Assembly (NCBI GenBank): GCA_964188305.1
Contig: OZ076896.1
Origin: Podarcis bocagei
Lineage: Eukaryota
Length of the DNA stretch: 64,000 bases
Direction: 5' to 3' (one strand)
Position numbers and translations under genes: made by a program. The notes under the pieces are model-generated. The model had not been told where the DNA came from. It did not search any database and was given only the letters and a program-made list of their open reading frames with translations. Below, one piece after another: positions 5,133 through 64,000 of the stretch. Positions within the stretch are counted from its first letter, which is position 1; each line of letters starts with the position of its first letter.

Positions 5133-8100
5133 TTAAACAGAAGTTACCAGGTAGGATCCAGAATGACGCTTAGGACTTTGGGCACCACTTGAATCTGTAC
5201 CTTCAGTCTTTGAATCTCGTTTTTTTGTGCTGTTATTCACTGGTGTTGGTATCTGCGATGGCCGCGTGGAACTGGAAGTGTTATCCACGCTGCTTTTTCT
5301 GGGGCTTGGATTGTAGTTGAAAGGAGTCACTCTTGCCGCAACAGCACCACTGGGTGAACTGTGTTTGCTTGAGCTGCTGGAACTGAATGGCGTACGTTCA
5401 TTAACAGTGTTTTCACTAGTCTCTGGGGCAAGGGCAGGGTTGCCTAGCAAAGGTTTCGTTTCCGTTCCCTTCTTGTCTGGACTATCTACTTGAATAAATG
5501 AATTCAGGCGGGTTTCTAAACCCACAGTACGAACAGGGACATTCCCATTTCCTCCATTTTGTTTTCCGTTAAGATCTTTGCTATTCACATTCCCTTTCTC
5601 CGAAACACTGTCAATAACAGGGGGGGTGTTCCCTGTGGGAGATTTTCCAGATCTAGGATTATTAATAGGGCAGTCCTCAATCCTTACCCAAACATCTTCT
5701 GTCTTTGAGACGGCAGGTGCCATCTGGTAAATGAGAGTTTTTGAATCGGAACCATTGGTAGCACCTGGTGGGGAATTCTGAGGAGGACTTGTCATTATCT
5801 GAGGAATTTCGTTCTCTTTAATCTTCCGCCAAGTACCTTTTGTTGGCGCTTGACTCTCTTTAGATTGCTTGAGTCCAGAAAAAGAACTTACATGTTGCTT
5901 TTCATCCTCACTCTTTGCCTTCTCACTGGATTCTGAAGAAGCTGAAAGAATTGAGGAAGAACTTCCAGTCCTACGCCAGGTGCTCACACGAGGAAGTGAT
6001 GAGGAATGTTTACTATGTTCGCGCTTCCAAGTCCCCGATCTGTTAATTGGCAGCCTGGAAGGACTCTCTGAGTGAGACCTAGTTATGTCATGCCGTTTTG
6101 TTGGTCTCCCATCACTGTATTCCAAAGAAGGACTCAGGCTAGGAGGTAACTTTCGCCAGCCACCAGCTTGGATGGCTGAATGAGTAGATAAAGACATATC
6201 AGGAAGGGATGGGCTTAAAACTGGAGTCTGCGTTTGGGACTGTGTAGGAGAGTCTGGTCTGGAAGGTGACAAAGATTCAAACGAGGCAGACTCTTCCAAT
6301 TTCCTTCTTAGAGTGGGACTTGGAGTTTCTTTAATAAAAGTTGACTGGCGGACCAAAACAGGTCTCTCAGATCTATCAGATTCACTCCCACTGGATTTGG
6401 CCGATGACATTCTAGATACATCAGGCTTCTTGTTTGATCCGCTGATACCAGAAATTTGGTTTAATCCTTTTGAGGCAGATTCACTTCTGGGAATACCACT
6501 GGTACTTTTGGGCAACCCAGTTTGTTTCCCCCCAGTTTGCTGGCTCATCTGTCTGCCTGGAGAGGTGTATACCATTCTTCCTGAACCAGAAGACTTAGTG
6601 GAAGTGGTACTCGGAGAAGACGTTCGTGGCAGCTGGGAGAGTTTATTAGGGGGACTTATGCCATTTCTGCCGGGTGAAATTGAATTTCGGCCAGGAGACT
6701 GCAGAGGTCTGGTTAAGGGTTGCTGTTGTGGTCTAGAAGGTGTGGAATCTCTAGATCCTGATCTAGAAGGTCCTTTACTTGATCCACCTTGTTGAGATGG
6801 CTGCCTGGATATAGGACTTGGCTCAGGTTTTACAGATGGTTTGGCTACTCTGGGAGAACTAGTAGAAGTCTGGTTATCATTAGGACTTTTGGAGGTTGCA
6901 CTCTTTAGTTGAGGCCCTTTTTTAGAAACTGGACTTGTACTTGAGGAGCTATTTCGAACTCCAGGAATATGAATCATTGTCCTACCTCGGGAGATTGAGG
7001 GCATATTGGTTTGCAACGGCTGTTTCAAATGACTTGTAAGTTCTGAATTAGAACGAGCTTTACCTGTGATCATGCTTTTATACACTTTCTTTCCTCCTTT
7101 GATACCTTTATTTTCAGAGTCTACTTTCTTTGTTTCCAGTGTACTCTTCTCCCCTGGTTTAATAATTCTTGGACCCTTATTACTAGTAAAAGGTTTTTCT
7201 TCTTGGTCGGGTGTAAGATGAAAGGGTGATCCTAAGGAAATTCCAGATTTTAATGAAAGGATTGAATCAGAGTCTGATGAGGCTTGTCTAGACAGTGATG
7301 CTGCTGCAGCAGCTTGATGTAAGCTGCTAACAATAGAATTAGCACCTTCTTGAATAGCTTTCCAGTCAAAATTTTCTGAATCTGGTGAGAAACCATGTTC
7401 TGAATCAGGCCTTTGTATATCCTTCAAATCTAGTGTCAGGTCTTCTGCCAAAATGCCTCCCATATTTCTAGAGCTATTTTTTTCACTGTCTGATTTTGTT
7501 CTAGAAGGCTTTTTCTTTTTAGGCATGGCAGAACTAATACACTCCTGTAGAAGATCATCTTCTGAGTCAATACTAAGGGAACTGAGGGAACTGTTTCTTG
7601 AAAAACACACGGGAGTATCTTCGACATGAAATGATTTAGGAGCATAGCCAGAAACTTGTGGTCTACTTGGTTCTATCTGTGCATCAGATGGTTCCATTTG
7701 TTCTCTGGGTCCACTTTCTTTGTTATTGTTGTTTTCTTGATCGATATCACTGAGAGAACTCAGAGACGAATTGCGAGAGAAGCAAACAGGAGTATTTTCT
7801 ATTGCAAAATTTTGTGTTTTCTCATCGGAAGCTGCAGCCCTTTCTGAAATATCTTTGGATGACTGAGAGAATGGAGTTTGCTTCTGCACCAGAGTTTTGG
7901 GTTGCTTTCTTCCTGCTGGAGTGTGTTTTTGGCAAGCTTGCATTCTACTGCTTGATTGCTGGCTTGCAGACTGATGTTCTGCATTGGTACTAGGTTTAAT
8001 TTCCCTTTCTTTCCCCTTTCTCAGTTCTGCCTTTTCCCTTGAAAGATCCACATCGTCGTCAAAGTCTAGAGAACTCAAAGAGTCATTACGTGAAAAACAA

Positions 8101-26063: not shown

Positions 26064-26197
26064 NNNNNNNNNNNNNNNNNNNNNNNNNNNNNNNNNNNNN
26101 NNNNNNNNNNNNNNNNNNNNNNNNNNNNNNNNNNNNNNNNNNNNNNNNNNNNNNNNNNNNNNNNNNNNNNNNNNNNNNNNNNNNNNNNNNNNNNNNN
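26064..26197. other. Assembly gap (134 N) in intron 6
   Basis: Run of N. Confidence 1.
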
Positions 26198-34294: not shown

Positions 34295-35165
34295 TTTTTT
34301 AAATTTCTTTTTATTGAATTTCACTTAAATAACCAAAAGGAAAAACAAATAAACAATTTCAAAAGAAATATCCATACATAACACAAAAAACCATCAGTTT
34401 CCATTACAATTATTTGTCTTCTTCCTTAAATCTTTTTATCTTTAAATCTTTCCTCTACATACCTATTGACCTTCCCTCCCGATTTCGGACTTCTTAATAA
34501 AACTTCTTTCTTTTTTCTGCAGCTTTAATTGTTAATGGTTTGCGCATCGTAAGATTTATATCAAACCTGCTGTAGTTTTTAAGTTTCTATAGCTTCCTTC
34601 AATGTATACCATAAATTTATTCCAGTCACTAATAAACTTTGTATTTTTTTGGTTTCTAATTTTTTGCGTCATTTTTGCTAGTTCAACATATTCAAATAAT
34701 TTTGTTTGCCAATCTCTGATAGTTGGGGTGTTTGGGTTTTTCCAATTTTGTGCTATTAATATTCTAGCCGCTACTGTTGCATATTGGAATAGTGTCTTAT
34801 CTTCTTTTTTAATTTCATCCCCAATTATTCCTAGTAAGGAGGCTTCTGGTCTTTTAGGGAAGATGTATTTAAATATTTTTTTTAACTCATTATAGATAAG
34901 TTCCCAGAACTTCTTCATTTCTTCGCAGGTCCACCACATTTGGTAGAAATTGCCTTCTTTGATTTTACACTTCCAGCAAGCCTTATTTCCTGTTTTGTAC
35001 ATTTTCCCTAGTTTTGCCGGTGTGATGTACCACCTATACATCATTTTTTCCAAATTTTCTCTAAGCGTGACGCATGCCGTGAATTTCATTCCACTGCTCC
35101 ATAATTTCAACCACTTATCATACTCTATATTGTATCCCAAGTCCATTGCCCATTTTGTCATTTTG
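34295..35165 (-). mobile_element. 5'-truncated L1-clade LINE (ORF2 C-terminus, 3'UTR, A tail)
   Basis: Open frame KWAMDLG...RWYITP..L..MY...CWKC...GNFYQMWWTC...FW (zf-RVT region); 13-bp TSD TCCAAAGATTCCT at 34282-34294 and 35166-35178; AATAAA at 34310-34315. Confidence 0.9.
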
Positions 35166-35903
35166 TCCAAAGATTCCTGTGCGTGAGTAGAAGGTACTTT
35201 CATGGTTAAACAATGTCTGGTTCCCCTTGTCCTCTCTCTCTGCTGACGCCTGCATATCCGAAAAGCCACCCTTGAGGAATGGAGGGCCATCCATAATGCT
35301 ATATGATAATGTGTGAGAACGTGTGACTATGAGAGAGATTTCAGTCATGCATGCTCACCCCTGGATCCAAGCCCTTGATAACCGCAATTAAGAATGAAAC
35401 ATGTCATTAACAAGTAAAACATATGCATATTCTGAAATTCTCTCGTATAAGTTAACGAAATGTATGTATTAATATCCTATGGTCTACGGGGAGCAACTCT
35501 GAGTCTAGATTTCCAGCTAAACAGATTATTGGAAGGAAGAGGCGAGTGCCTACATAAGTCACCTCTCCAGGAATACCGATTAAGGAGAGAAAGATGGAGC
35601 TGCTGTGCTTTCAGAATATCCTTCTCATCAAGCACATGGGTTGGCATGGGTAGCTTTCGTTCAATAGAGAGATCTATGAGCAGAGCAGCAGATTGTGTTC
35701 TGCAAAGCACTAGTGAAGATTTTGTTTCAAGATGCATTCCCAGACTTGTAGAAATGGAATTATGATTTCTTAAGAATTATCAGAATACCAGGCAAGACAC
35801 AGGACTTGAAATATTTTGTCTTGTCCCCTACCCAAAGAAGAGAGGGGGACTTTTAAAATTGAAGTATTTTTCATAAAACACATAATATGATAAAAAACAT
35901 TAC

Positions 35904-39656: not shown

Positions 39657-39791
39657 CTTCATATTGGATGCTTCTGTTTCCAGTTTTGTAAGATGATTTG
39701 AATTATCTTCCAGTTCTTGTCGAAGGTTTGAGTTCTCCATTTTTAATGCCTCTACTTGTTTTAACAGCTGATCATATGACACTGCAGCCAT
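39657..39791 (-). CDS. APC: APC coding exon 1 (135 nt coding; exon starts at 39809 with 18 nt of 5'UTR)
   Basis: ctgtag|GTCCTGGGGTAGCCCAGA-ATG; MAAVSYDQLLKQVEALKMENSNLRQELEDNSNHLTKLETEASNMK|gtataa; in-frame TAG 9 nt upstream of the ATG. Confidence 0.98.
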
Positions 39792-40129
39792 TCTGGGCTA
39801 CCCCAGGACCTACAGCAGAATAAAGAAGAAATATTTGTTTTGGTTCATTTGTCCCCCAAAATGTATTGTGAACTTTGAATGTTGACTTTTGAGAGAAATA
39901 ATTAGAACATGCTATTTCATTTCCCAGGTGAATATAGTATTTTTTGTATCTCGTGGAAGGTTTTTAAACTGATCATATAATCATATAAACCACGTTAAAC
40001 TTGGCTACCTTACTCACTTATTTTTAGACCTTAACAAGCTTTGTTTAGTGACATGAAAAATGCTTTCTACTAGGAAGTTCTAATTGAAGTCAATACAAAT
40101 TATAGGAGTTCTGCTGCTTTCCTAGCCTT

Positions 40130-42127: not shown

Positions 42128-42409
42128 TACAGGCCAAGGGAGCCGGGGTTTTCCACAGTCAGTTTTTCCGGGTCATGTGGCCAGCATGACATTCTGGTGC
42201 AACGGGACACCGAAACCAGAGCAGCGCATGGAAACGCCATTTACCTTCCTGCTGGAGCGGTACCTATTTGTCTACTTGCACTTTTTGGCATGCTTTCGAA
42301 CTGCTAGGTTGGCAGGAGCTGGGACCGAGCAATGGGAGCTCACCCCGTTGTGGGGATTCGAACCGCCGACCTTCTGATCGGCAAGCCCAAGAGGCTCAGT
42401 GGTTTAGAC

Positions 42410-42894
42410 CAGTGTTTCCCAACCTTTTTTGGGCAAAGGCACACTTGTTTGATGAAAAAAATCTCGAGGCACACCACCATTACAGCCCCGTGACGTCAGC
42501 ACGCAGCGTCACGCCGGGAGGGACGCACGAAAGTGTAAGTTTCAATTTTTTTCCCTCCCCCTTGCCGGGGAACCTCCAAGCTTTGGGGGTGGGGGGGAGG
42601 ATGCAGCAAAGCGAGGCAGGAAGGAGAGCGCGGCTTGGCTGGGTGAGCTTTGGCAGGGGCAGGGAATGAGAGCCGCGAGGCGGGCGCTGCGGACGGAGGC
42701 GCTGCCCGCCGAGCTCGCAGGCAGCCAGGCAGGCAGACGGCAAGAGCCCCGCGCTGGGCGGCCTCTCCTCGCCGCCGCCGCCCCGCCTCTCGCCGCCCGA
42801 CTCGCCCGCCTCCCTCCAGGCAACATCTCGTGGCACACCAGGCAACATCTCGCGGCACACTAGTGTGCCGCGGAACAGTGATTGGGAAACACTG
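42410..42894. mobile_element. GC-rich non-autonomous hAT element nested in the SINE
   Basis: TIR CAGTGTTTCCCAA...TTGGGAAACACTG; perfect 8-bp TSD GTTTAGAC. Confidence 0.92.
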
Positions 42895-43612
42895 GTTTAG
42901 ACCACAGCACCACCTGCGTCCCTCTAATGCAAATGTGGGAAACCCTTTCAGCCCTAAGGTCCCAACTGCTAACATGAACCGTGGGTGGGGCCAGAGGCAA
43001 AAAGTGAGTGAATGTGACTCTTTCTACAGTATGCTACATATTTTCTACACTAATATCCACATTTTTCTGTCCACCATCCAGTCAAGGAAGGATTTATCAC
43101 CATTATCACCACCAACAATACATTTCAGCCAGGCAAAAGCACTTGAGGAGGGCATGGAGCAGGGTCAGTGAGAAGTAGGTGTGGCCTAATGAGAATACCA
43201 AGCTCCTAACAAGAGTCCTAGAGAGCCACATTTGGCCCCTGGACCGGAGGTTTCCCACTTCTACTCTACAGCTACAGTTGATCTTTCCAAGTGATTTAAC
43301 ATAACATAGATTGGAACGGACACAGAGCCTTGTGGAACACACCTCACAGCATCTTGCCCATATCTAAGCAGACTGTTTCTGAGCAGACTTAAGAGCAGGG
43401 AACTTTTTGGGTGGCCCTAGTGCAAAGCTATTGGAGGCTGCATTTAAATAGTGGGTGGGTCAGACATCACACTCCCTTTAACAAAGACACACAGAGATTT
43501 AATACAGGCTCTCCTTCAATCTCTCTCCCCCCTCACAGTTTTTTCTTCTCAGTGCACAGAGGAAACTCCACCAGCTGCTCTTCCTGGATAGCCTGTATGC
43601 TGCATTTCCTTG

Positions 43613-59388: not shown

Positions 59389-61392
59389 CTGTCACCATTA
59401 TCCTGGTCTGTACATAATGCTAAACAATAAGGTTATAGCCAATGAAGGCACAGCGCTTGCAGAATGACTTATGCTCACACAATGGAACTTCCTCTCATTT
59501 CTCTTCACACATATCTGCTGGGACAGGGTCCCCTAACACTTGAAGAGGATGGGAGGCAGAGGGATAAGAGAGGAGGGAACATTTTATTGTGCAAGTGTAA
59601 GTCATTCCATAAACGCAATAATGTCTCTAGGAACACAGAAATTCTCAATTTATAGAAATTAAGAATACCTGTACATTCTTGGAAGTTTCATATCAGTTAA
59701 TTTGTACCCTAAAATAGTGTGTTCAGGTATTAAACTACTCCCTTGGGATAAGCTTATCTGCAATGCAGTCTTTATGAAGAGGAAGAGAAGGAGGATATCA
59801 GGAGGAAACAGAAGTCCAAGCGTAATAATATGCTAAGGGACCTTGTGATCTCCACTAAACTTGTTTCCTGACTCACTAGGATTAGTAAAACTGAAAGCAT
59901 GCCATTTACAAAATGTTAAAAAGTGAAGTTTTAACTATGTAGAAATTATCTGTCTCAAATATAATACTTTTCCACTACTTGAATAAAAGTTAGTCATGTA
60001 TTTTTAGTTCTTTAATATTTTAGTCTTTAACAGTTATTGAATACCCCACACCCAATTCTGTCTTTTAAGTATACAACATATATTGGAGGCGAGGAAGAAT
60101 CTCTCTCTCCCACAAATGGATAGGGAGATAGAATAGTAGAAAACAGCACATATCTCCCTATCCACAGGTATCTTTAAATAAAACTGTGATTGGATACACT
60201 TGTGTGTAAAGTTTCTTTGAAATAAAGCTTACTTCCAGAGATAAAATGAAGTTGAAACCAATTGATAAATAGGCCAAGGGTGGCAATTATGTATACGCTA
60301 TTAGTAGGAATAGGGTATCGTGCAAATGTTGGTCCACAAAGGCCAATCTACAGATTACTTTCCCCACACAGGTTACTTCTATATACCCAAATATAGTATT
60401 TAATACAGTTTGCTATGTGGAACTTCCCAATCAGGAAAGCTTTCATAGTTGTAACAGATGCCTTCCACACTGCTAGTGTAGAAACTTCTCACACAAGACC
60501 TGAAAGTAATTGTGAGTGGTAAGAAAACCTTATTGGAACTGCAAGGATCAGTGTGGCAATCTGGGTTAGATATTAGTTAGATACACATGGTTGCCATGAA
60601 GAAGTGGACAGCCATATGGAGAAGGTATTATGCAGATTATTCACAAGAGTTCAGCATAGCAGCATAATGAGCAGTTATTGTAAAATCTATCACTGATCCC
60701 CATAACAACTTCCTGCAGGTGAACAAAAGTTCAATTTTCAAAACAGGAAACAAACCTAATAAACTGCTAGAGCCAAACTGAATTTAGACTCAAGTCCAAT
60801 GTTCAGCTAACATGTTAGTATCTGCCTACAAGTGGCATAGTTGGTTACAAGTCACCAACACCCTTCAACTTCTAGCAACACCAGAGGCCGCAATGTATTT
60901 ATAGACTCATGAGTGTTTCTCAGAATTCCCACCAATAAACTACAAAAACCATGTCTCTTATAGGAGTAAGAGCACCATTCCTGGAACAATATATGGGAAC
61001 AATTATTCCAAAGAAAATGCAAGCAAAGGTAAATCCACTGAGATGCACTCACCAAGAAGAAAAGTTAGATTGCTCCAGCCTCCATACAGTCTGAAATCTA
61101 AGTAGAAGGGGGAAAAACCAGAGCAATTAACAGCAATACGACGACTGGCTGGTTCTATAAAAGGGATGGGAATCAGAAGTTCCACAGAAGTTGCTAGGCT
61201 ACAACTCCCATCAACCCTGGCTACTGCTCATTTTGGGTGAGCTGATGGGAGTTGCAATTCAAAACATTTAGGGGACACTGGAATGAGGAAACCTTCCATA
61301 AGGTTAACTAGTACTCACTGTTCTTATTGAAGCAGTACCCTTTCTGAAATGATATCAAAAATATTTCCTCTTGCTGAAAAATCCATTTAAAG

Positions 61393-61528
61393 CAGGCTTC
61401 CTCAAACTCAGCCTTCCAGATGTTTTTGGCCTACAACTCCCATGATCCCTAGCTAGCAGGACCAGTGGTCAGGGATGATGGGAACTGCAGTCTCAAAGCA
61501 TCTGGAGGGCCGAGTTTGAGGAAGCCTG
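61393..61528. mobile_element. Palindromic hAT MITE
   Basis: TIR CAGGCTTCCTCAAACTC...GAGTTTGAGGAAGCCTG; perfect TSD ATTTAAAG. Confidence 0.92.
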
Positions 61529-61887
61529 ATTTAAAGGATTGACCATAAAAAGTGATAAAAACTGAATAAATGTTGATCATGTAGATTGACTCATTTGCTT
61601 GGAGACTGCACACCTGCCTGAAGGGCCACTGAGAATGTACAAGACCACTGTGGAGCCTACTGTAGGCAATTTGCGTAGCCTCCATGATGGCGAGTGTAGT
61701 ATACAAGTGTTACCCTGTTCCCATTGGAATGTAAGAGCTCAGAACAAAGGTCCAACATACTGTTTCCATGGCCAAGAAGATGCCTATGGAAAGCCTACAA
61801 GCAGGACCAGAGTTTGACAGTACCCACCCATCTATTTTTCTTAATTAAATTTGGATACTGCCCTTCATCCACAGATCTCAGGGCAGT

Positions 61888-62096
61888 AAAGAACAGTCCT
61901 GTTTACGAACTCTGCAAAACCGGAAATAGTGTCCCAGTTTGCGATCTTTACCTTGGTCTAAGAACAGAATCCGAACAGTGGAAGGGCCCTGGCGATGGGA
62001 GGCCTCATTAGGGAAAGTGCGCCTTGGTTTAAGAATGGTTTTGGTTTAAAGACTGACTTCCAGAACAGATTAAGTTCGTAAACCGAAGTACCACTG
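61888..62096. mobile_element. 5'-truncated copy of the 15534 MITE family
   Basis: Colinear with 15550-15774; ends GTACCACTG-TA. Confidence 0.8.
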
Positions 62097-62353
62097 TACT
62101 TGCGATTCCCAAGCATTCAGAGGCATATTGTCTCCCACCATAGCTATTACAGCTAGTGGTCATTCACATTCACTCATCCTCCATTGATCTGTCTAATCTT
62201 CTTTTAAAGACAGCAAAGTTGCTCCAAAGTTATAAGCTTTCCTCACAGGGGGGTTGCTTCACCCCCTTGCTCATTTTGGTTGCCTTTTTTTTCATATATT
62301 CAATATCCTCCTTCAGCTGCAGCAAGCAATCATATTCTCACCAGTTTTATATA

Positions 62354-62583
62354 CAGTGGTGCCCCGTAAGACGAATGCCTCGCAAGACAAAAAACTCGCT
62401 AGACGAAAGGTTTTTTCATTCGCGATTTGCCTCGCAAGACGAATTCCCCTATGGGCTTGCTTCGCAAGACGAAAACTTCTTGCGACTTTGTTAAACCGTT
62501 TAAACCGTGCTTCGCAAGACGAAAAATTCGTTAGACGGCAAAAATTGCGGAACGAATTAATTTCGTCTTGCGGGGCACCACTG
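62354..62583. mobile_element. Tc1/mariner (pogo-like) MITE
   Basis: TIR CAGTGGTGCCCCG...CGGGGCACCACTG, TA TSD. Confidence 0.9.
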
Positions 62584-63399
62584 TAATAGCATTAAGCTAC
62601 AGGGTGTTTTAGTTTCATTCACTTTCTTAATGATCCCTAAAGTAAAATTCAACATATCTTGGTTTTTGTGCCCCAACGTGCTTCATTTTACACTTGCTAA
62701 CACTGAATTACATTGCCACTATACTGCTCATTCACACAGTTTTGGAGAGATTCTCTATAATGCAGAAGCATTTATCAGTAGTCCCCCGTGTGGAGGTTGG
62801 AATGTTTGTATCATCCCCAGTTCAGCTGAAAACCACTACTTCACTACAACAAAGCATGGGTTTAATGGGCAGAGGAATAAAATAGGATAACTTCAGTGAA
62901 CAAACTGCAGAGTTCCGATACGACCGGTTGTAGCAAATCCGCAGTTGTCACAATCCAAACTACTTAGTTCCTAACTTTGTGAAAGCGCAACCGCCCCAAT
63001 TTCTACTCCTTTTGCCAACGGAAAGTAGAGGCAGATGCGATTTGGGGTCTTTGGGACCCGTCTGCCCGTTGCAAACAACTCCATGCAACTTTTACCCTTT
63101 TTGTGATGCACTCTTCCCAACAGCGGCCACCATCGACAGCCCTACCAAATAAAGAGAACATAGGCCTGTAGGCACCAGTGTCCCATTTCCTATAGTGCCC
63201 CCACAAACAGGGCATGAGACACCCTCACCTCCAAGTGGTGGGGACCCCCATCCACCAACTCCTTAGGGAGAAGACCCACGGGCCACAGAAGGTCGCTTTA
63301 ACTTACATGGGGCTCTGGCTCGAAATTGTAAAAGCCCCGTCATAGGGAAAGGGCAGGGTTTTGAAGAACTAGGGCTCCAAGAAGCCAGCCAGACAATGG

Positions 63400-64000
63400 G
63401 GCAATGGTGCCTGCTGCCCCGTGGAGTGGGGGGGGGGAGGCGGAACGACCCTCAAAGACCCCAGATCCCCGACCTGCTTTGACTGGCAAGGCTGCCTCGA
63501 GCTCAGGCGAGGAGGAGGAGGAAGAAAGGCATCGAAGCCGGTGTACTGACTCTGGCCAGGTGTGCTGCTTGCTGCCGCCGCCTCAACTCACCTGCCCGCC
63601 TCTTCGCCCTCCGCACCCAGCAGCAGCAGCGCCGCCGCAGCCGCCCCTCCCGGGACTCCGCCGCTGCCTCCGTCGCGGCCGGCGCTCGGGGGACTCGGCC
63701 CCACCACGAAGCTGGGAGGCGGCCGCCCACACATCCGGGGCGCGGGGGAAGGCCGTGGGGGGACACGCTCCCCTTCCTCACAGGCGGCGGCGGCAGCAGC
63801 AGGCGAGAGGGGAGCTGGTCCCCCTGCCGCCGCCCCGACTTCTCATCCCCGAGAAGGCGGCTCCCCTCCACTCGCGCCTCGGTCGGTGTCGGTGTCGGTG
63901 CCGGCCCGCCTGCGGCCTCTGCCCTCGCCACACTGGTAACCTGCTGCCCGTCACCGCCCCCCTCACTCCAACTTCCCGGCCAGCCTCCCCGCCGCCATCT
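63400..64000 (-). promoter_or_regulatory. APC: CpG island with APC promoter/exon 1B orthologue (donor CAG|GTGAGT at 63592; possible second donor CAG|GTTACC at 63941)
   Basis: Very GC- and CpG-rich; consensus donor in APC orientation; YY1 motif AGATGGCGGC at 64000-63991; GC boxes. Confidence 0.8.

What the first reader, a model, noticed from the sequence alone, without database searches (positions are those of the whole stretch)
63960..64000. YY1 motif at the 1B start, matching the human GAPPS mutation site
Seen: the minus strand begins AGATGGCGGC (YY1 core ATGGCG) at the 5' end of the CpG-island exon, followed by GGCCGGGAAGT (ETS-like). Established: point mutations in a YY1 motif of human APC promoter 1B cause gastric adenocarcinoma and proximal polyposis (GAPPS). 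The rest of this exon does not resemble my recollection of human 1B, so the motif looks selectively retained. Its ATG also opens an 11-codon uORF (MAAGRLAGKLE-stop).
Basis: partly seen in the sequence, partly recalled or inferred. Interest (0 to 1): 0.7.

Follow-up and report, generated by a model that had tools for sequence, protein, structure and literature searches.

The report
Conserved YY1 site starting APC exon 1B
The lizard APC tumour-suppressor gene begins its distal first exon with the same YY1 binding motif that is mutated in a human hereditary stomach-cancer syndrome. The motif is kept at that spot in lizards, turtle, chicken and mouse, so this is the expected ortholog of a known element rather than something new.

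Summary
The minus strand at 64000-63991 reads AGATGGCGGC, the only exact copy in the window (0.002 expected by chance in this CpG island).

The interpretation also holds.
- The window carries a complete wall-lizard-type APC gene on the minus strand.
- Two spliced RNA contigs from two studies (10.8 and 11.5 kb) use 63592-64000 as their first exon. They end only 6-8 bases beyond the window edge. They splice from 63592 to a previously unnoticed 45-nt exon (61097-61053).
- The donor proposed at 63941 is not used.
- APC mRNA contigs from a scincoid lizard, Pelodiscus turtle, chicken and a Mus-type rodent all begin 0-10 bases before the same motif.
- ATGGCG is the longest invariant run in a five-lineage alignment of this exon.
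- Papers give the human GAPPS site as AAGATGGC on the sense strand, and all seven in-window positions match.

Two details need correcting. The ETS-like string is not conserved. The rest of the exon is alignable and has other conserved blocks.

YY1 binding itself was not tested. This is the ortholog of a known element, so interest is modest. No human DNA was fetched.

The parts
63991..64000 (-). YY1-type motif AGATGGCGGC. The consensus is AAnATGGCGGC, and its first base falls outside the window.
   Evidence: Sequence. Only exact copy in the window. Chance expectation 0.002 in the island. ATGGCG is invariant in 5 lineages and ATGGCGGCG in 4 sauropsids.
63963..63998 (-). uORF1: 11 codons (MAAGRLAGKLE) plus TGA. 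Its AUG is the ATG of the YY1 core.
   Evidence: An 11-codon uORF from the same ATG to the same GTGAGG stop occurs in scincoid, Pelodiscus and Gallus; the Mus-type leader has 6 codons. The peptide is not conserved beyond the residues encoded by the motif.
63592..64000 (-). Exon 1B, the distal non-coding first exon of APC. This is the part inside the window; the assembled 5' end lies at about 64006-64008. Donor is CAG|GTGAGT at 63592|63591.
   Evidence: Contigs X1 record 8 and X2 record 16 cover 63592-64000. Joint 63592->61097 has CT..AC ends on the + strand. Intron bins 62601-63500 have depth 0. In X24 the first mates lie on the + strand, so the RNA comes from the minus strand. Foreign 1B leaders map here in an unbiased search of the whole window.
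63251..64000 (.). CpG island, cut off by the window edge.
   Evidence: GC 0.66-0.74 and CpG o/e 0.68-0.81; composition profile.
63954..63965 (-). GC box TGAGGGGGGCGG directly after the uORF1 stop (Sp1-type by consensus).
   Evidence: Sequence. TGAGGGGGCGG is present in the Mus-type leader and GGGGGCGG in the scincoid leader. Binding was not tested.
63971..63981 (-). ETS-like string GGCCGGGAAGT: imperfect and not conserved, probably not a functional site.
   Evidence: Sequence. No counterpart at this place in the alignments.
61053..61097 (-). 45-nt leader exon joined to exon 1B. It has an AG acceptor and a G|GTGAGT donor.
   Evidence: Joint 63592->61097 in X1, X2 and one X24 read; the depth of bin 61001-61100 is about 47% of contig depth. 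Sequence. Homolog in scincoid mRNA L001 392-436. Absent from the turtle, chicken and rodent leaders.
39657..39809 (-). ATG exon of APC: 18 nt of leader plus 45 codons, with the ATG at 39791.
   Evidence: Its junction to the 45-nt exon is inferred from scincoid mRNA L001 and from the contig lengths. It was not seen directly in this species.

Best explanation
The CpG island at the right end of the window is the distal promoter of APC (promoter 1B), and 63592-64000 is its non-coding first exon. Transcription on the minus strand starts a few to a few tens of bases upstream of 64000. The sense-oriented AGATGGCGGC therefore lies just downstream of the start site, which is the usual place and orientation of functional YY1 sites in TATA-less CpG-island promoters. 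YY1 bound there would help to fix and drive initiation.

The transcript then splices 1B -> 45-nt exon -> ATG exon. The site is the positional ortholog of the human APC 1B YY1 motif, whose point mutations lower YY1 binding and promoter activity and cause GAPPS.

Shown here: the motif, exon use, strand, donor, approximate 5' end, and conservation of motif and position across five amniote lineages.
Inferred: that YY1 binds it in the lizard, and that it is needed for promoter activity.
For: - Gene: the window holds a whole APC gene on the minus strand, 99% identical to Podarcis muralis APC.
- RNA: spliced contigs from two studies carry 63592-64000 as their terminal exon and end 6 and 8 nt beyond it. 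The GT..AG joint goes to 61097. Stranded reads fit minus-strand RNA.
- Contig length: 10.8-11.5 kb equals leader plus 8.5 kb CDS plus 1.8-2.5 kb 3' UTR.
- Other species: mRNA contigs from a scincoid lizard, Pelodiscus, Gallus and a Mus-type rodent begin 10, 0, 10 and 0 nt before the same motif and splice into the ATG exon (labels).
- Conservation: the longest invariant run of the exon is ATGGCG in 5 lineages and ATGGCGGCG in the sauropsids.
- Unbiased mapping: the foreign leaders land on 63592-64000 in a search of the whole window.
- Human site: AAGATGGC, with c.-195A, -192A, -191T and -190G on the sense strand (PMC12960954, PMC11078748, PMC12413324). Those mutations reduce YY1 binding and promoter activity (PMC6284852, PMC12975475, PMC12960954).
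- YY1 position rule: YY1 motifs are enriched, with a strand bias, within about 30 bp downstream of initiation sites. Their ablation is predicted to remove initiation up to about 50 bp upstream (PMC11160661; also PMC8384218).
Against: - No test of YY1 occupancy or promoter activity in any reptile was possible.
- The 5' ends come from RNA-seq assemblies, not cap-selected data, so the true start site is only bracketed.
- The promoter proper lies outside the window.
- Raw-read depth on the exon is low (at most 3.8). The tool labels X1/X2 as RNA only by a guess, although their splicing shows they are cDNA.
- The join of the 45-nt exon to the ATG exon is inferred for this species.
- Similarity of the exon to the rodent exon outside the motif is weak (E about 0.06).
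- The motif's ATG is also a uORF start, so conservation alone cannot separate a DNA-level role from an RNA-level role.
Confidence: 0.8

Rival explanations
1. The conserved letters are kept mainly as an upstream start codon. Under this reading uORF1, together with two further conserved uAUGs, tunes APC translation from 1B transcripts, and the match to YY1 is secondary.
For: - The uAUG is present in all five lineages.
- uORF1 is exactly 11 codons with the same stop in four sauropsids, in a stretch free of indels, while the rest of the exon is full of them.
- Where visible, the context is strong (purine at -3, G at +4).
- Every published human GAPPS point variant hits the ATG or its -3 base (PMC11078748).
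Against: - Conservation runs past the ATG into GCGGCG, as the YY1 consensus requires.
- The peptide is not conserved, and the rodent uORF has a different length.
- The AUG lies within about 10 nt of the assembled 5' ends, and cap-proximal AUGs are poorly recognised (general knowledge).
- Losing a uORF should raise APC output, yet the human variants lower promoter activity, YY1 binding and allele-specific RNA (PMC6284852, PMC12960954).
Confidence: 0.1
2. The element is a start-site-proximal downstream promoter element read by some factor other than YY1, or by the basal machinery itself.
For: Its position just downstream of the start overlaps that of downstream core-promoter elements (PMC8384218). 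Some YY1-motif instances behave as cryptic initiators (PMC11160661). Two contigs start exactly at the motif.
Against: The sequence is a full match to the extended YY1 consensus, and in humans YY1 binding to the orthologous site has been shown and is lost in the mutants (PMC6284852). YY1's placental-only paralogs are not expected in reptiles (my knowledge, not tested).
Confidence: 0.07
3. It is a chance occurrence of a GC-rich word in a CpG island, with no function.
For: CpG islands are rich in GGCGGC-type words. A one-mismatch copy lies at 63852-63861 on the other strand.
Against: The expected count is 0.002 in the island and 6e-5 at this place and strand. The same motif sits at the same exon end in five lineages separated by roughly 300 million years.
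Confidence: 0.02

Closest known systems
Human APC promoter 1B YY1 motif (the GAPPS site, c.-195 to c.-189 of NM_001127511)
   Same: Same gene, same distal CpG-island first exon and same sense orientation. The same letters are present at all 7 positions that lie in the window (AGATGGC versus human AAGATGGC, from PMC12960954). It sits at the very start of the exon, as shown here for the Mus-type ortholog.
   Different: The lizard leader has an extra 45-nt exon between 1B and the ATG exon. uORF1 has 11 codons in sauropsids and 6 in the rodent. Function and YY1 binding are shown only in humans. I did not compare human DNA, so the link to human rests on letters printed in papers and on the rodent exon.
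The general class of sense-oriented YY1 motifs just downstream of start sites in CpG-island promoters
   Same: TATA-less CpG island, motif in the sense orientation, and assembled 5' ends 0-10 nt upstream of it in six independent assemblies. This fits the roughly 30-bp downstream window described in PMC11160661 and PMC8384218.
   Different: The true start site has not been mapped with cap-selected data in any of these species.
Multi-uORF leaders of the ATF4/GCN4 type
   Same: A very short first uORF near the cap, followed by a longer uORF that overlaps the main start out of frame in the lacertid, scincoid and turtle.
   Different: No evidence of translation or stress control. In chicken and rodent the third uORF ends before the APC start. 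This is an analogy only, not a membership claim.

Membership tests
APC exon 1B / distal promoter | CpG-island first exon upstream of the proximal (1A-type) island and of the ATG exon, on the APC strand | tested here: met
   Islands at 63251-64000 and 42251-43000, with the ATG exon at 39809-39657, all on the minus-strand gene.
APC exon 1B / distal promoter | Transcribed and spliced into APC coding exons | tested here: met
   Joint 63592->61097 lies in contigs of 10.8 and 11.5 kb. The scincoid mRNA L001 carries the homologous 1B exon, small exon, ATG exon and full CDS on one contig. The last junction in this species is inferred.
APC exon 1B / distal promoter | Homology to the mammalian exon 1B | tested here: met
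   A five-way alignment with the Mus-type leader shares the ATGGCG start, the CGCC..ATG block and the CAG donor. Pairwise similarity outside these blocks is weak.
YY1 binding site | Match to the consensus AAnATGGCG(G/C) | tested here: met
   AGATGGCGGC matches at all 10 positions that lie in the window. The scincoid leader has AAAATGGCGGC and chicken has GAGATGGCGGC.
YY1 binding site | Sense orientation within about 30 bp downstream of the start site | tested here: inconclusive
   The orientation is sense. Assembled 5' ends lie 0-10 nt upstream in six assemblies. No cap-selected data were available.
YY1 binding site | Occupancy by YY1 protein | not testable with these tools
   This needs EMSA, ChIP or CUT&RUN. 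It has been shown only for the human site (PMC6284852).
Ortholog of the human GAPPS site | Same bases at the positions mutated in patients (c.-195A, -192A, -191T, -190G) | tested here: met
   A, T and G are present at 63998-63996. The c.-195 equivalent would be base 64001, outside the window. The human letters come from PMC12960954 and PMC11078748.
Ortholog of the human GAPPS site | Direct alignment to the human locus | not tested
   Human DNA was deliberately not fetched or compared. Orthology is bridged through the Mus-type exon 1B.
Regulatory uORF | uAUG with an in-frame stop in the leader, conserved in presence | tested here: met
   Present in all five lineages: 11 codons in four and 6 in one.
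Regulatory uORF | Evidence of translation, or a conserved peptide | tested here: not met
   The peptides diverge after MAAGR or MAA. Ribosome occupancy cannot be tested here.

The most novel reading that the evidence does not exclude
The YY1 core may be a dual-use element. As DNA it would set the 1B start site. As RNA its ATG would open a short cap-proximal uORF, kept at exactly 11 codons in sauropsids. Together with two further conserved uAUGs, this uORF would govern how many ribosomes reach the APC start, in an ATF4-like manner; the last uORF overlaps the APC start out of frame in lizards and turtle. Because every human GAPPS point variant hits this ATG or its -3 base, part of their effect could then be translational.
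Probability: 0.1. Interest if true: 0.6.

Novelty: new member of a known kind. Interest (0 to 1): 0.35.

Why it matters
This result shows, with transcript evidence and without using human DNA, that the few bases whose mutation causes GAPPS in people have stood at the start of the distal APC first exon since the common ancestor of reptiles, birds and mammals. That supports treating any change in this core as damaging. It also gives non-mammalian models (chicken, lizard) an orthologous site to test. In addition, it corrects the lizard gene model, which has an extra 45-nt leader exon. Finally, it points out that the disease site doubles as a conserved upstream start codon. None of this overturns current understanding.

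Tried and rejected
- Genomic loci of other species could not reach exon 1B. The collection's gene ranges start at the ATG, so the Anolis sagrei locus with a 10 kb flank held no 1B homolog. The Crocodylus gene was too long to be served. The Rhineura isoform was not on record.
- The long chicken contig L003 has only 18 nt of leader.
- The rat-like L006 and mouse L007 leaders are cut 36 and 6 nt short of the motif. L008 reached it.
- The DNA of a bat contig was withheld, and I did not pursue it.
- I took protein fragments P0226-P0228, P0230, P0232 and P0311-P0313 for human or primate and did not fetch their contigs.
- N-terminally extended isoforms that might begin in 1B: only the opossum has one, and its gene is too long.
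- Donor 63941: no joint was seen, and that stretch is a lacertid-specific insertion in the alignment.
- Matching contig ends to poly(A) signals was not exact, so only the lengths are used.
- Li et al. 2016 is not held in the library, so its results are cited through reviews.
- A simulation timed out and was replaced by an analytic Markov expectation.
- I rejected the ETS reading because the site is imperfect and not conserved.
- The N run at 26064-26197 was left untouched.

Full report
WHAT IS THERE

Read on the minus strand, the window's last bases are AGATGGCGGC (64000-63991). They are followed by GGGGAGGCTGGCCGGGAAGTTGGAGTGAGG. The ATG at 63998 opens MAAGRLAGKLE, with a TGA at 63965-63963. 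The 10-mer is the only exact copy in 64 kb. Given the island's own dinucleotide make-up, 0.0023 copies are expected in the 750-nt island on both strands together, and 6e-5 on the sense strand in any 30-nt span. The region is a CpG island (GC 0.74, CpG o/e 0.81) that is cut off by the window edge. The phrase "at the 5' end of the exon" was a guess, because the window simply stops there.

WHICH GENE

The minus strand carries a complete APC gene. It has 15 coding exons, running from the ATG exon (39809-39657, ATG at 39791) to the large last exon ending at 5136. The large exon is 99% identical to Podarcis muralis APC, so this is a wall-lizard-type lacertid. A second island at 42251-43000 lies about 3 kb upstream of the ATG exon and is 1A-like. 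The island in question lies 24 kb upstream.

RNA EVIDENCE

Reads and contigs of four runs of the same species label were laid on 61001-64000.
- Two contigs from two different studies (10,775 and 11,464 nt) contain 63592-64000 as their terminal piece.
- They run only 6 and 8 nt beyond 64000.
- Both join 63592 to 61097, skipping 2,494 nt. The skipped stretch ends in CT..AC on the + strand, which is GT..AG for a minus-strand RNA. One raw RNA-seq read shows the same joint.
- Intron bins 62601-63500 have zero depth.
- In the stranded raw-read run X24 the first mates lie on the + strand, as expected for minus-strand RNA.
- The contigs differ from the window only by one or two substitutions and by small repeat-length changes. 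None of these is in the motif.
- The tool labels these two runs as RNA only by a guess, but their spliced structure shows they are cDNA.

The acceptor at 61097 opens a 45-nt exon (61097-61053). It has a pyrimidine tract and AG before it and G|GTGAGT after it. Leader plus the 8.5 kb CDS comes to about 9.0 kb. This leaves 1.8 and 2.5 kb of 3' UTR in the two contigs, a plausible size for a full APC mRNA. The contig ends do not fall exactly on poly(A) signals.

OTHER SPECIES

Genomic loci could not reach a distal first exon, so I used assembled mRNA contigs that encode APC. Species labels rest on protein identity.

| Source | Label basis | Start of leader | Nt before the motif | uORF1 | Splicing |
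|---|---|---|---|---|---|
| Scincoid lizard, L001 (12 kb, full CDS) | 96% to Tiliqua | cccccaggcaAAAATGGCGGCGGGGAG | 10 | MAAGRVVEAAE* | Homolog of the 45-nt exon, then ATG exon |
| Pelodiscus, L004 | 100% over 320 aa | GATGGCGGCGGGGAG | 0 | MAAGRPVFEGV* | Directly to ATG exon |
| Gallus, L009 and L005 | 100% over 440 aa | ccctcgggcgAGATGGCGGCGAGGAG | 10 (L009) | MAARSPVRGSE* | Directly to ATG exon |
| Mus-type rodent, L008 | 98.6% to a mouse entry | AGATGGCGAAGG | 0 | MAKALC* | Directly to ATG exon |

Mouse L007 and rat-like L006 carry the same exon as L008, cut 6 and 36 nt shorter.

In the five-lineage alignment the longest invariant run is ATGGCG, and the next is 4 nt. Among the four sauropsids it is ATGGCGGCG, followed by GTGAGG at the uORF stop. 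In an unbiased search of the whole window:
- the scincoid leader lands on 63592-63853 and 63948-63998 (E 1e-30 and 9e-7);
- its small exon lands on 61052-61097;
- the chicken leader's first 47 nt land on 63954-64000 (E 4e-5);
- the turtle leader gives four colinear weak hits in 63609-63999;
- the rodent leader gives only weak hits, inside the same exon.

LINK TO THE HUMAN SITE

I did not fetch or compare human DNA. Papers give the human motif as AAGATGGC, with A1 = c.-195, A4 = c.-192, T5 = c.-191 and G6 = c.-190 on the APC sense strand (PMC12960954; variants also listed in PMC11078748; core at -192 to -189 in PMC12413324). All seven of those positions that fall inside the window are identical. 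The c.-195 equivalent would be base 64001. The patient variants reduce YY1 binding and promoter 1B activity (PMC6284852, PMC12975475), and a reporter study reproduced the loss (PMC12960954). Independent work places functional YY1 motifs, strongly strand-biased, within about 30 bp downstream of initiation sites. The same work predicts that ablating them removes initiation up to about 50 bp upstream (PMC11160661; see also PMC8384218). Six independent assemblies from five lineages end 0-10 nt upstream of the motif, which fits that picture.

MECHANISM

The most likely mechanism is as follows. YY1 binds the sense-oriented site just downstream of the 1B start sites and helps to place and drive initiation at this TATA-less island. 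A GC box (TGAGGGGGGCGG, 63965-63954) follows, and it is shared with the rodent and scincoid leaders. The transcript then splices 1B, the 45-nt exon and the ATG exon. The motif, exon, strand, donor, approximate 5' end and conservation are shown here. YY1 binding and its effect in reptiles are inferred. Confidence is 0.8.

RIVALS

The same ATG starts a uORF that is kept in all five lineages and is exactly 11 codons long in the sauropsids. All human point variants hit the ATG or its -3 base, so conservation and human genetics alone cannot exclude an RNA-level role. Four points argue against that role as the main one:
- the conserved run extends into GCGGCG;
- the peptide is not conserved;
- the AUG is very close to the cap;
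- the human variants lower RNA output and YY1 binding, which is not what loss of a uORF would do.

A different factor or a core-promoter reading (0.07) and chance (0.02) are less likely.

- The ETS-like string is one base off the core and has no counterpart in the other leaders.
- The rest of the exon is alignable across amniotes (55% mean column identity over five lineages, 70% over three sauropsids). It has other conserved blocks, including two further uAUGs and the donor.
- 1B does not splice directly to the ATG exon in this lizard. It goes through a 45-nt exon.

LIMITS

- There are no cap-selected data.
- The promoter proper lies outside the window.
- Raw-read depth on the exon is low.
- The junction of the 45-nt exon with the ATG exon is inferred for this species.
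- Only one mammalian lineage was usable.
- I did not fetch contigs that I took for human or primate, and I did not pursue a withheld bat contig.
- The assembly gap at 26064-26197 was left as it is.

VERDICT

This is a real, well-supported ortholog of a known human disease-relevant promoter element. It is a new member of a known kind, and its interest is modest.

Noticed in passing
window 61053-61097 (minus): A 45-nt non-coding exon lies between exon 1B and the ATG exon. It is used in both RNA contigs. A scincoid lizard mRNA shares it, but the turtle, chicken and rodent leaders lack it, so it looks squamate-specific. It carries a 6-codon uORF (MEAGAI*).
   Followed up: partly
window 63846-63778 and 63734 onward (minus); L001, L004, L009, L008 leaders: Besides uORF1, two further upstream AUGs sit at matching places in all five lineages. 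The third uORF overlaps the APC start codon out of frame in the lacertid, scincoid and turtle, but stops before it in chicken and rodent.
   Followed up: partly
window 63954-63965 (minus): The GC box TGAGGGGGGCGG lies directly after the uORF1 stop. TGAGGGGGCGG is present at the matching place in the Mus-type leader, and GGGGGCGG in the scincoid one. It is a possible Sp1-type partner of the YY1 site.
   Followed up: no
window 61401-61600 and 62301-62600: Two intron stretches show very high multi-copy RNA depth. The reads are only 95-99% alike, with many loose ends and opposite-strand joints. These are probably expressed transposon-derived repeats.
   Followed up: no
window 63618, 63756-63792, 63882: Exon 1B differs between the window and the RNA contigs of two studies by short repeat-length changes: 3 nt and 6 nt left out, and 1-3 nt put in. 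None touches the motif.
   Followed up: no
window 34559-35326 (minus): A 256-aa open frame sits in an APC intron. It looks like a remnant of a retrotransposon ORF.
   Followed up: no
window 42251-43000: A second CpG island lies about 3 kb upstream of the ATG exon.
   Followed up: no
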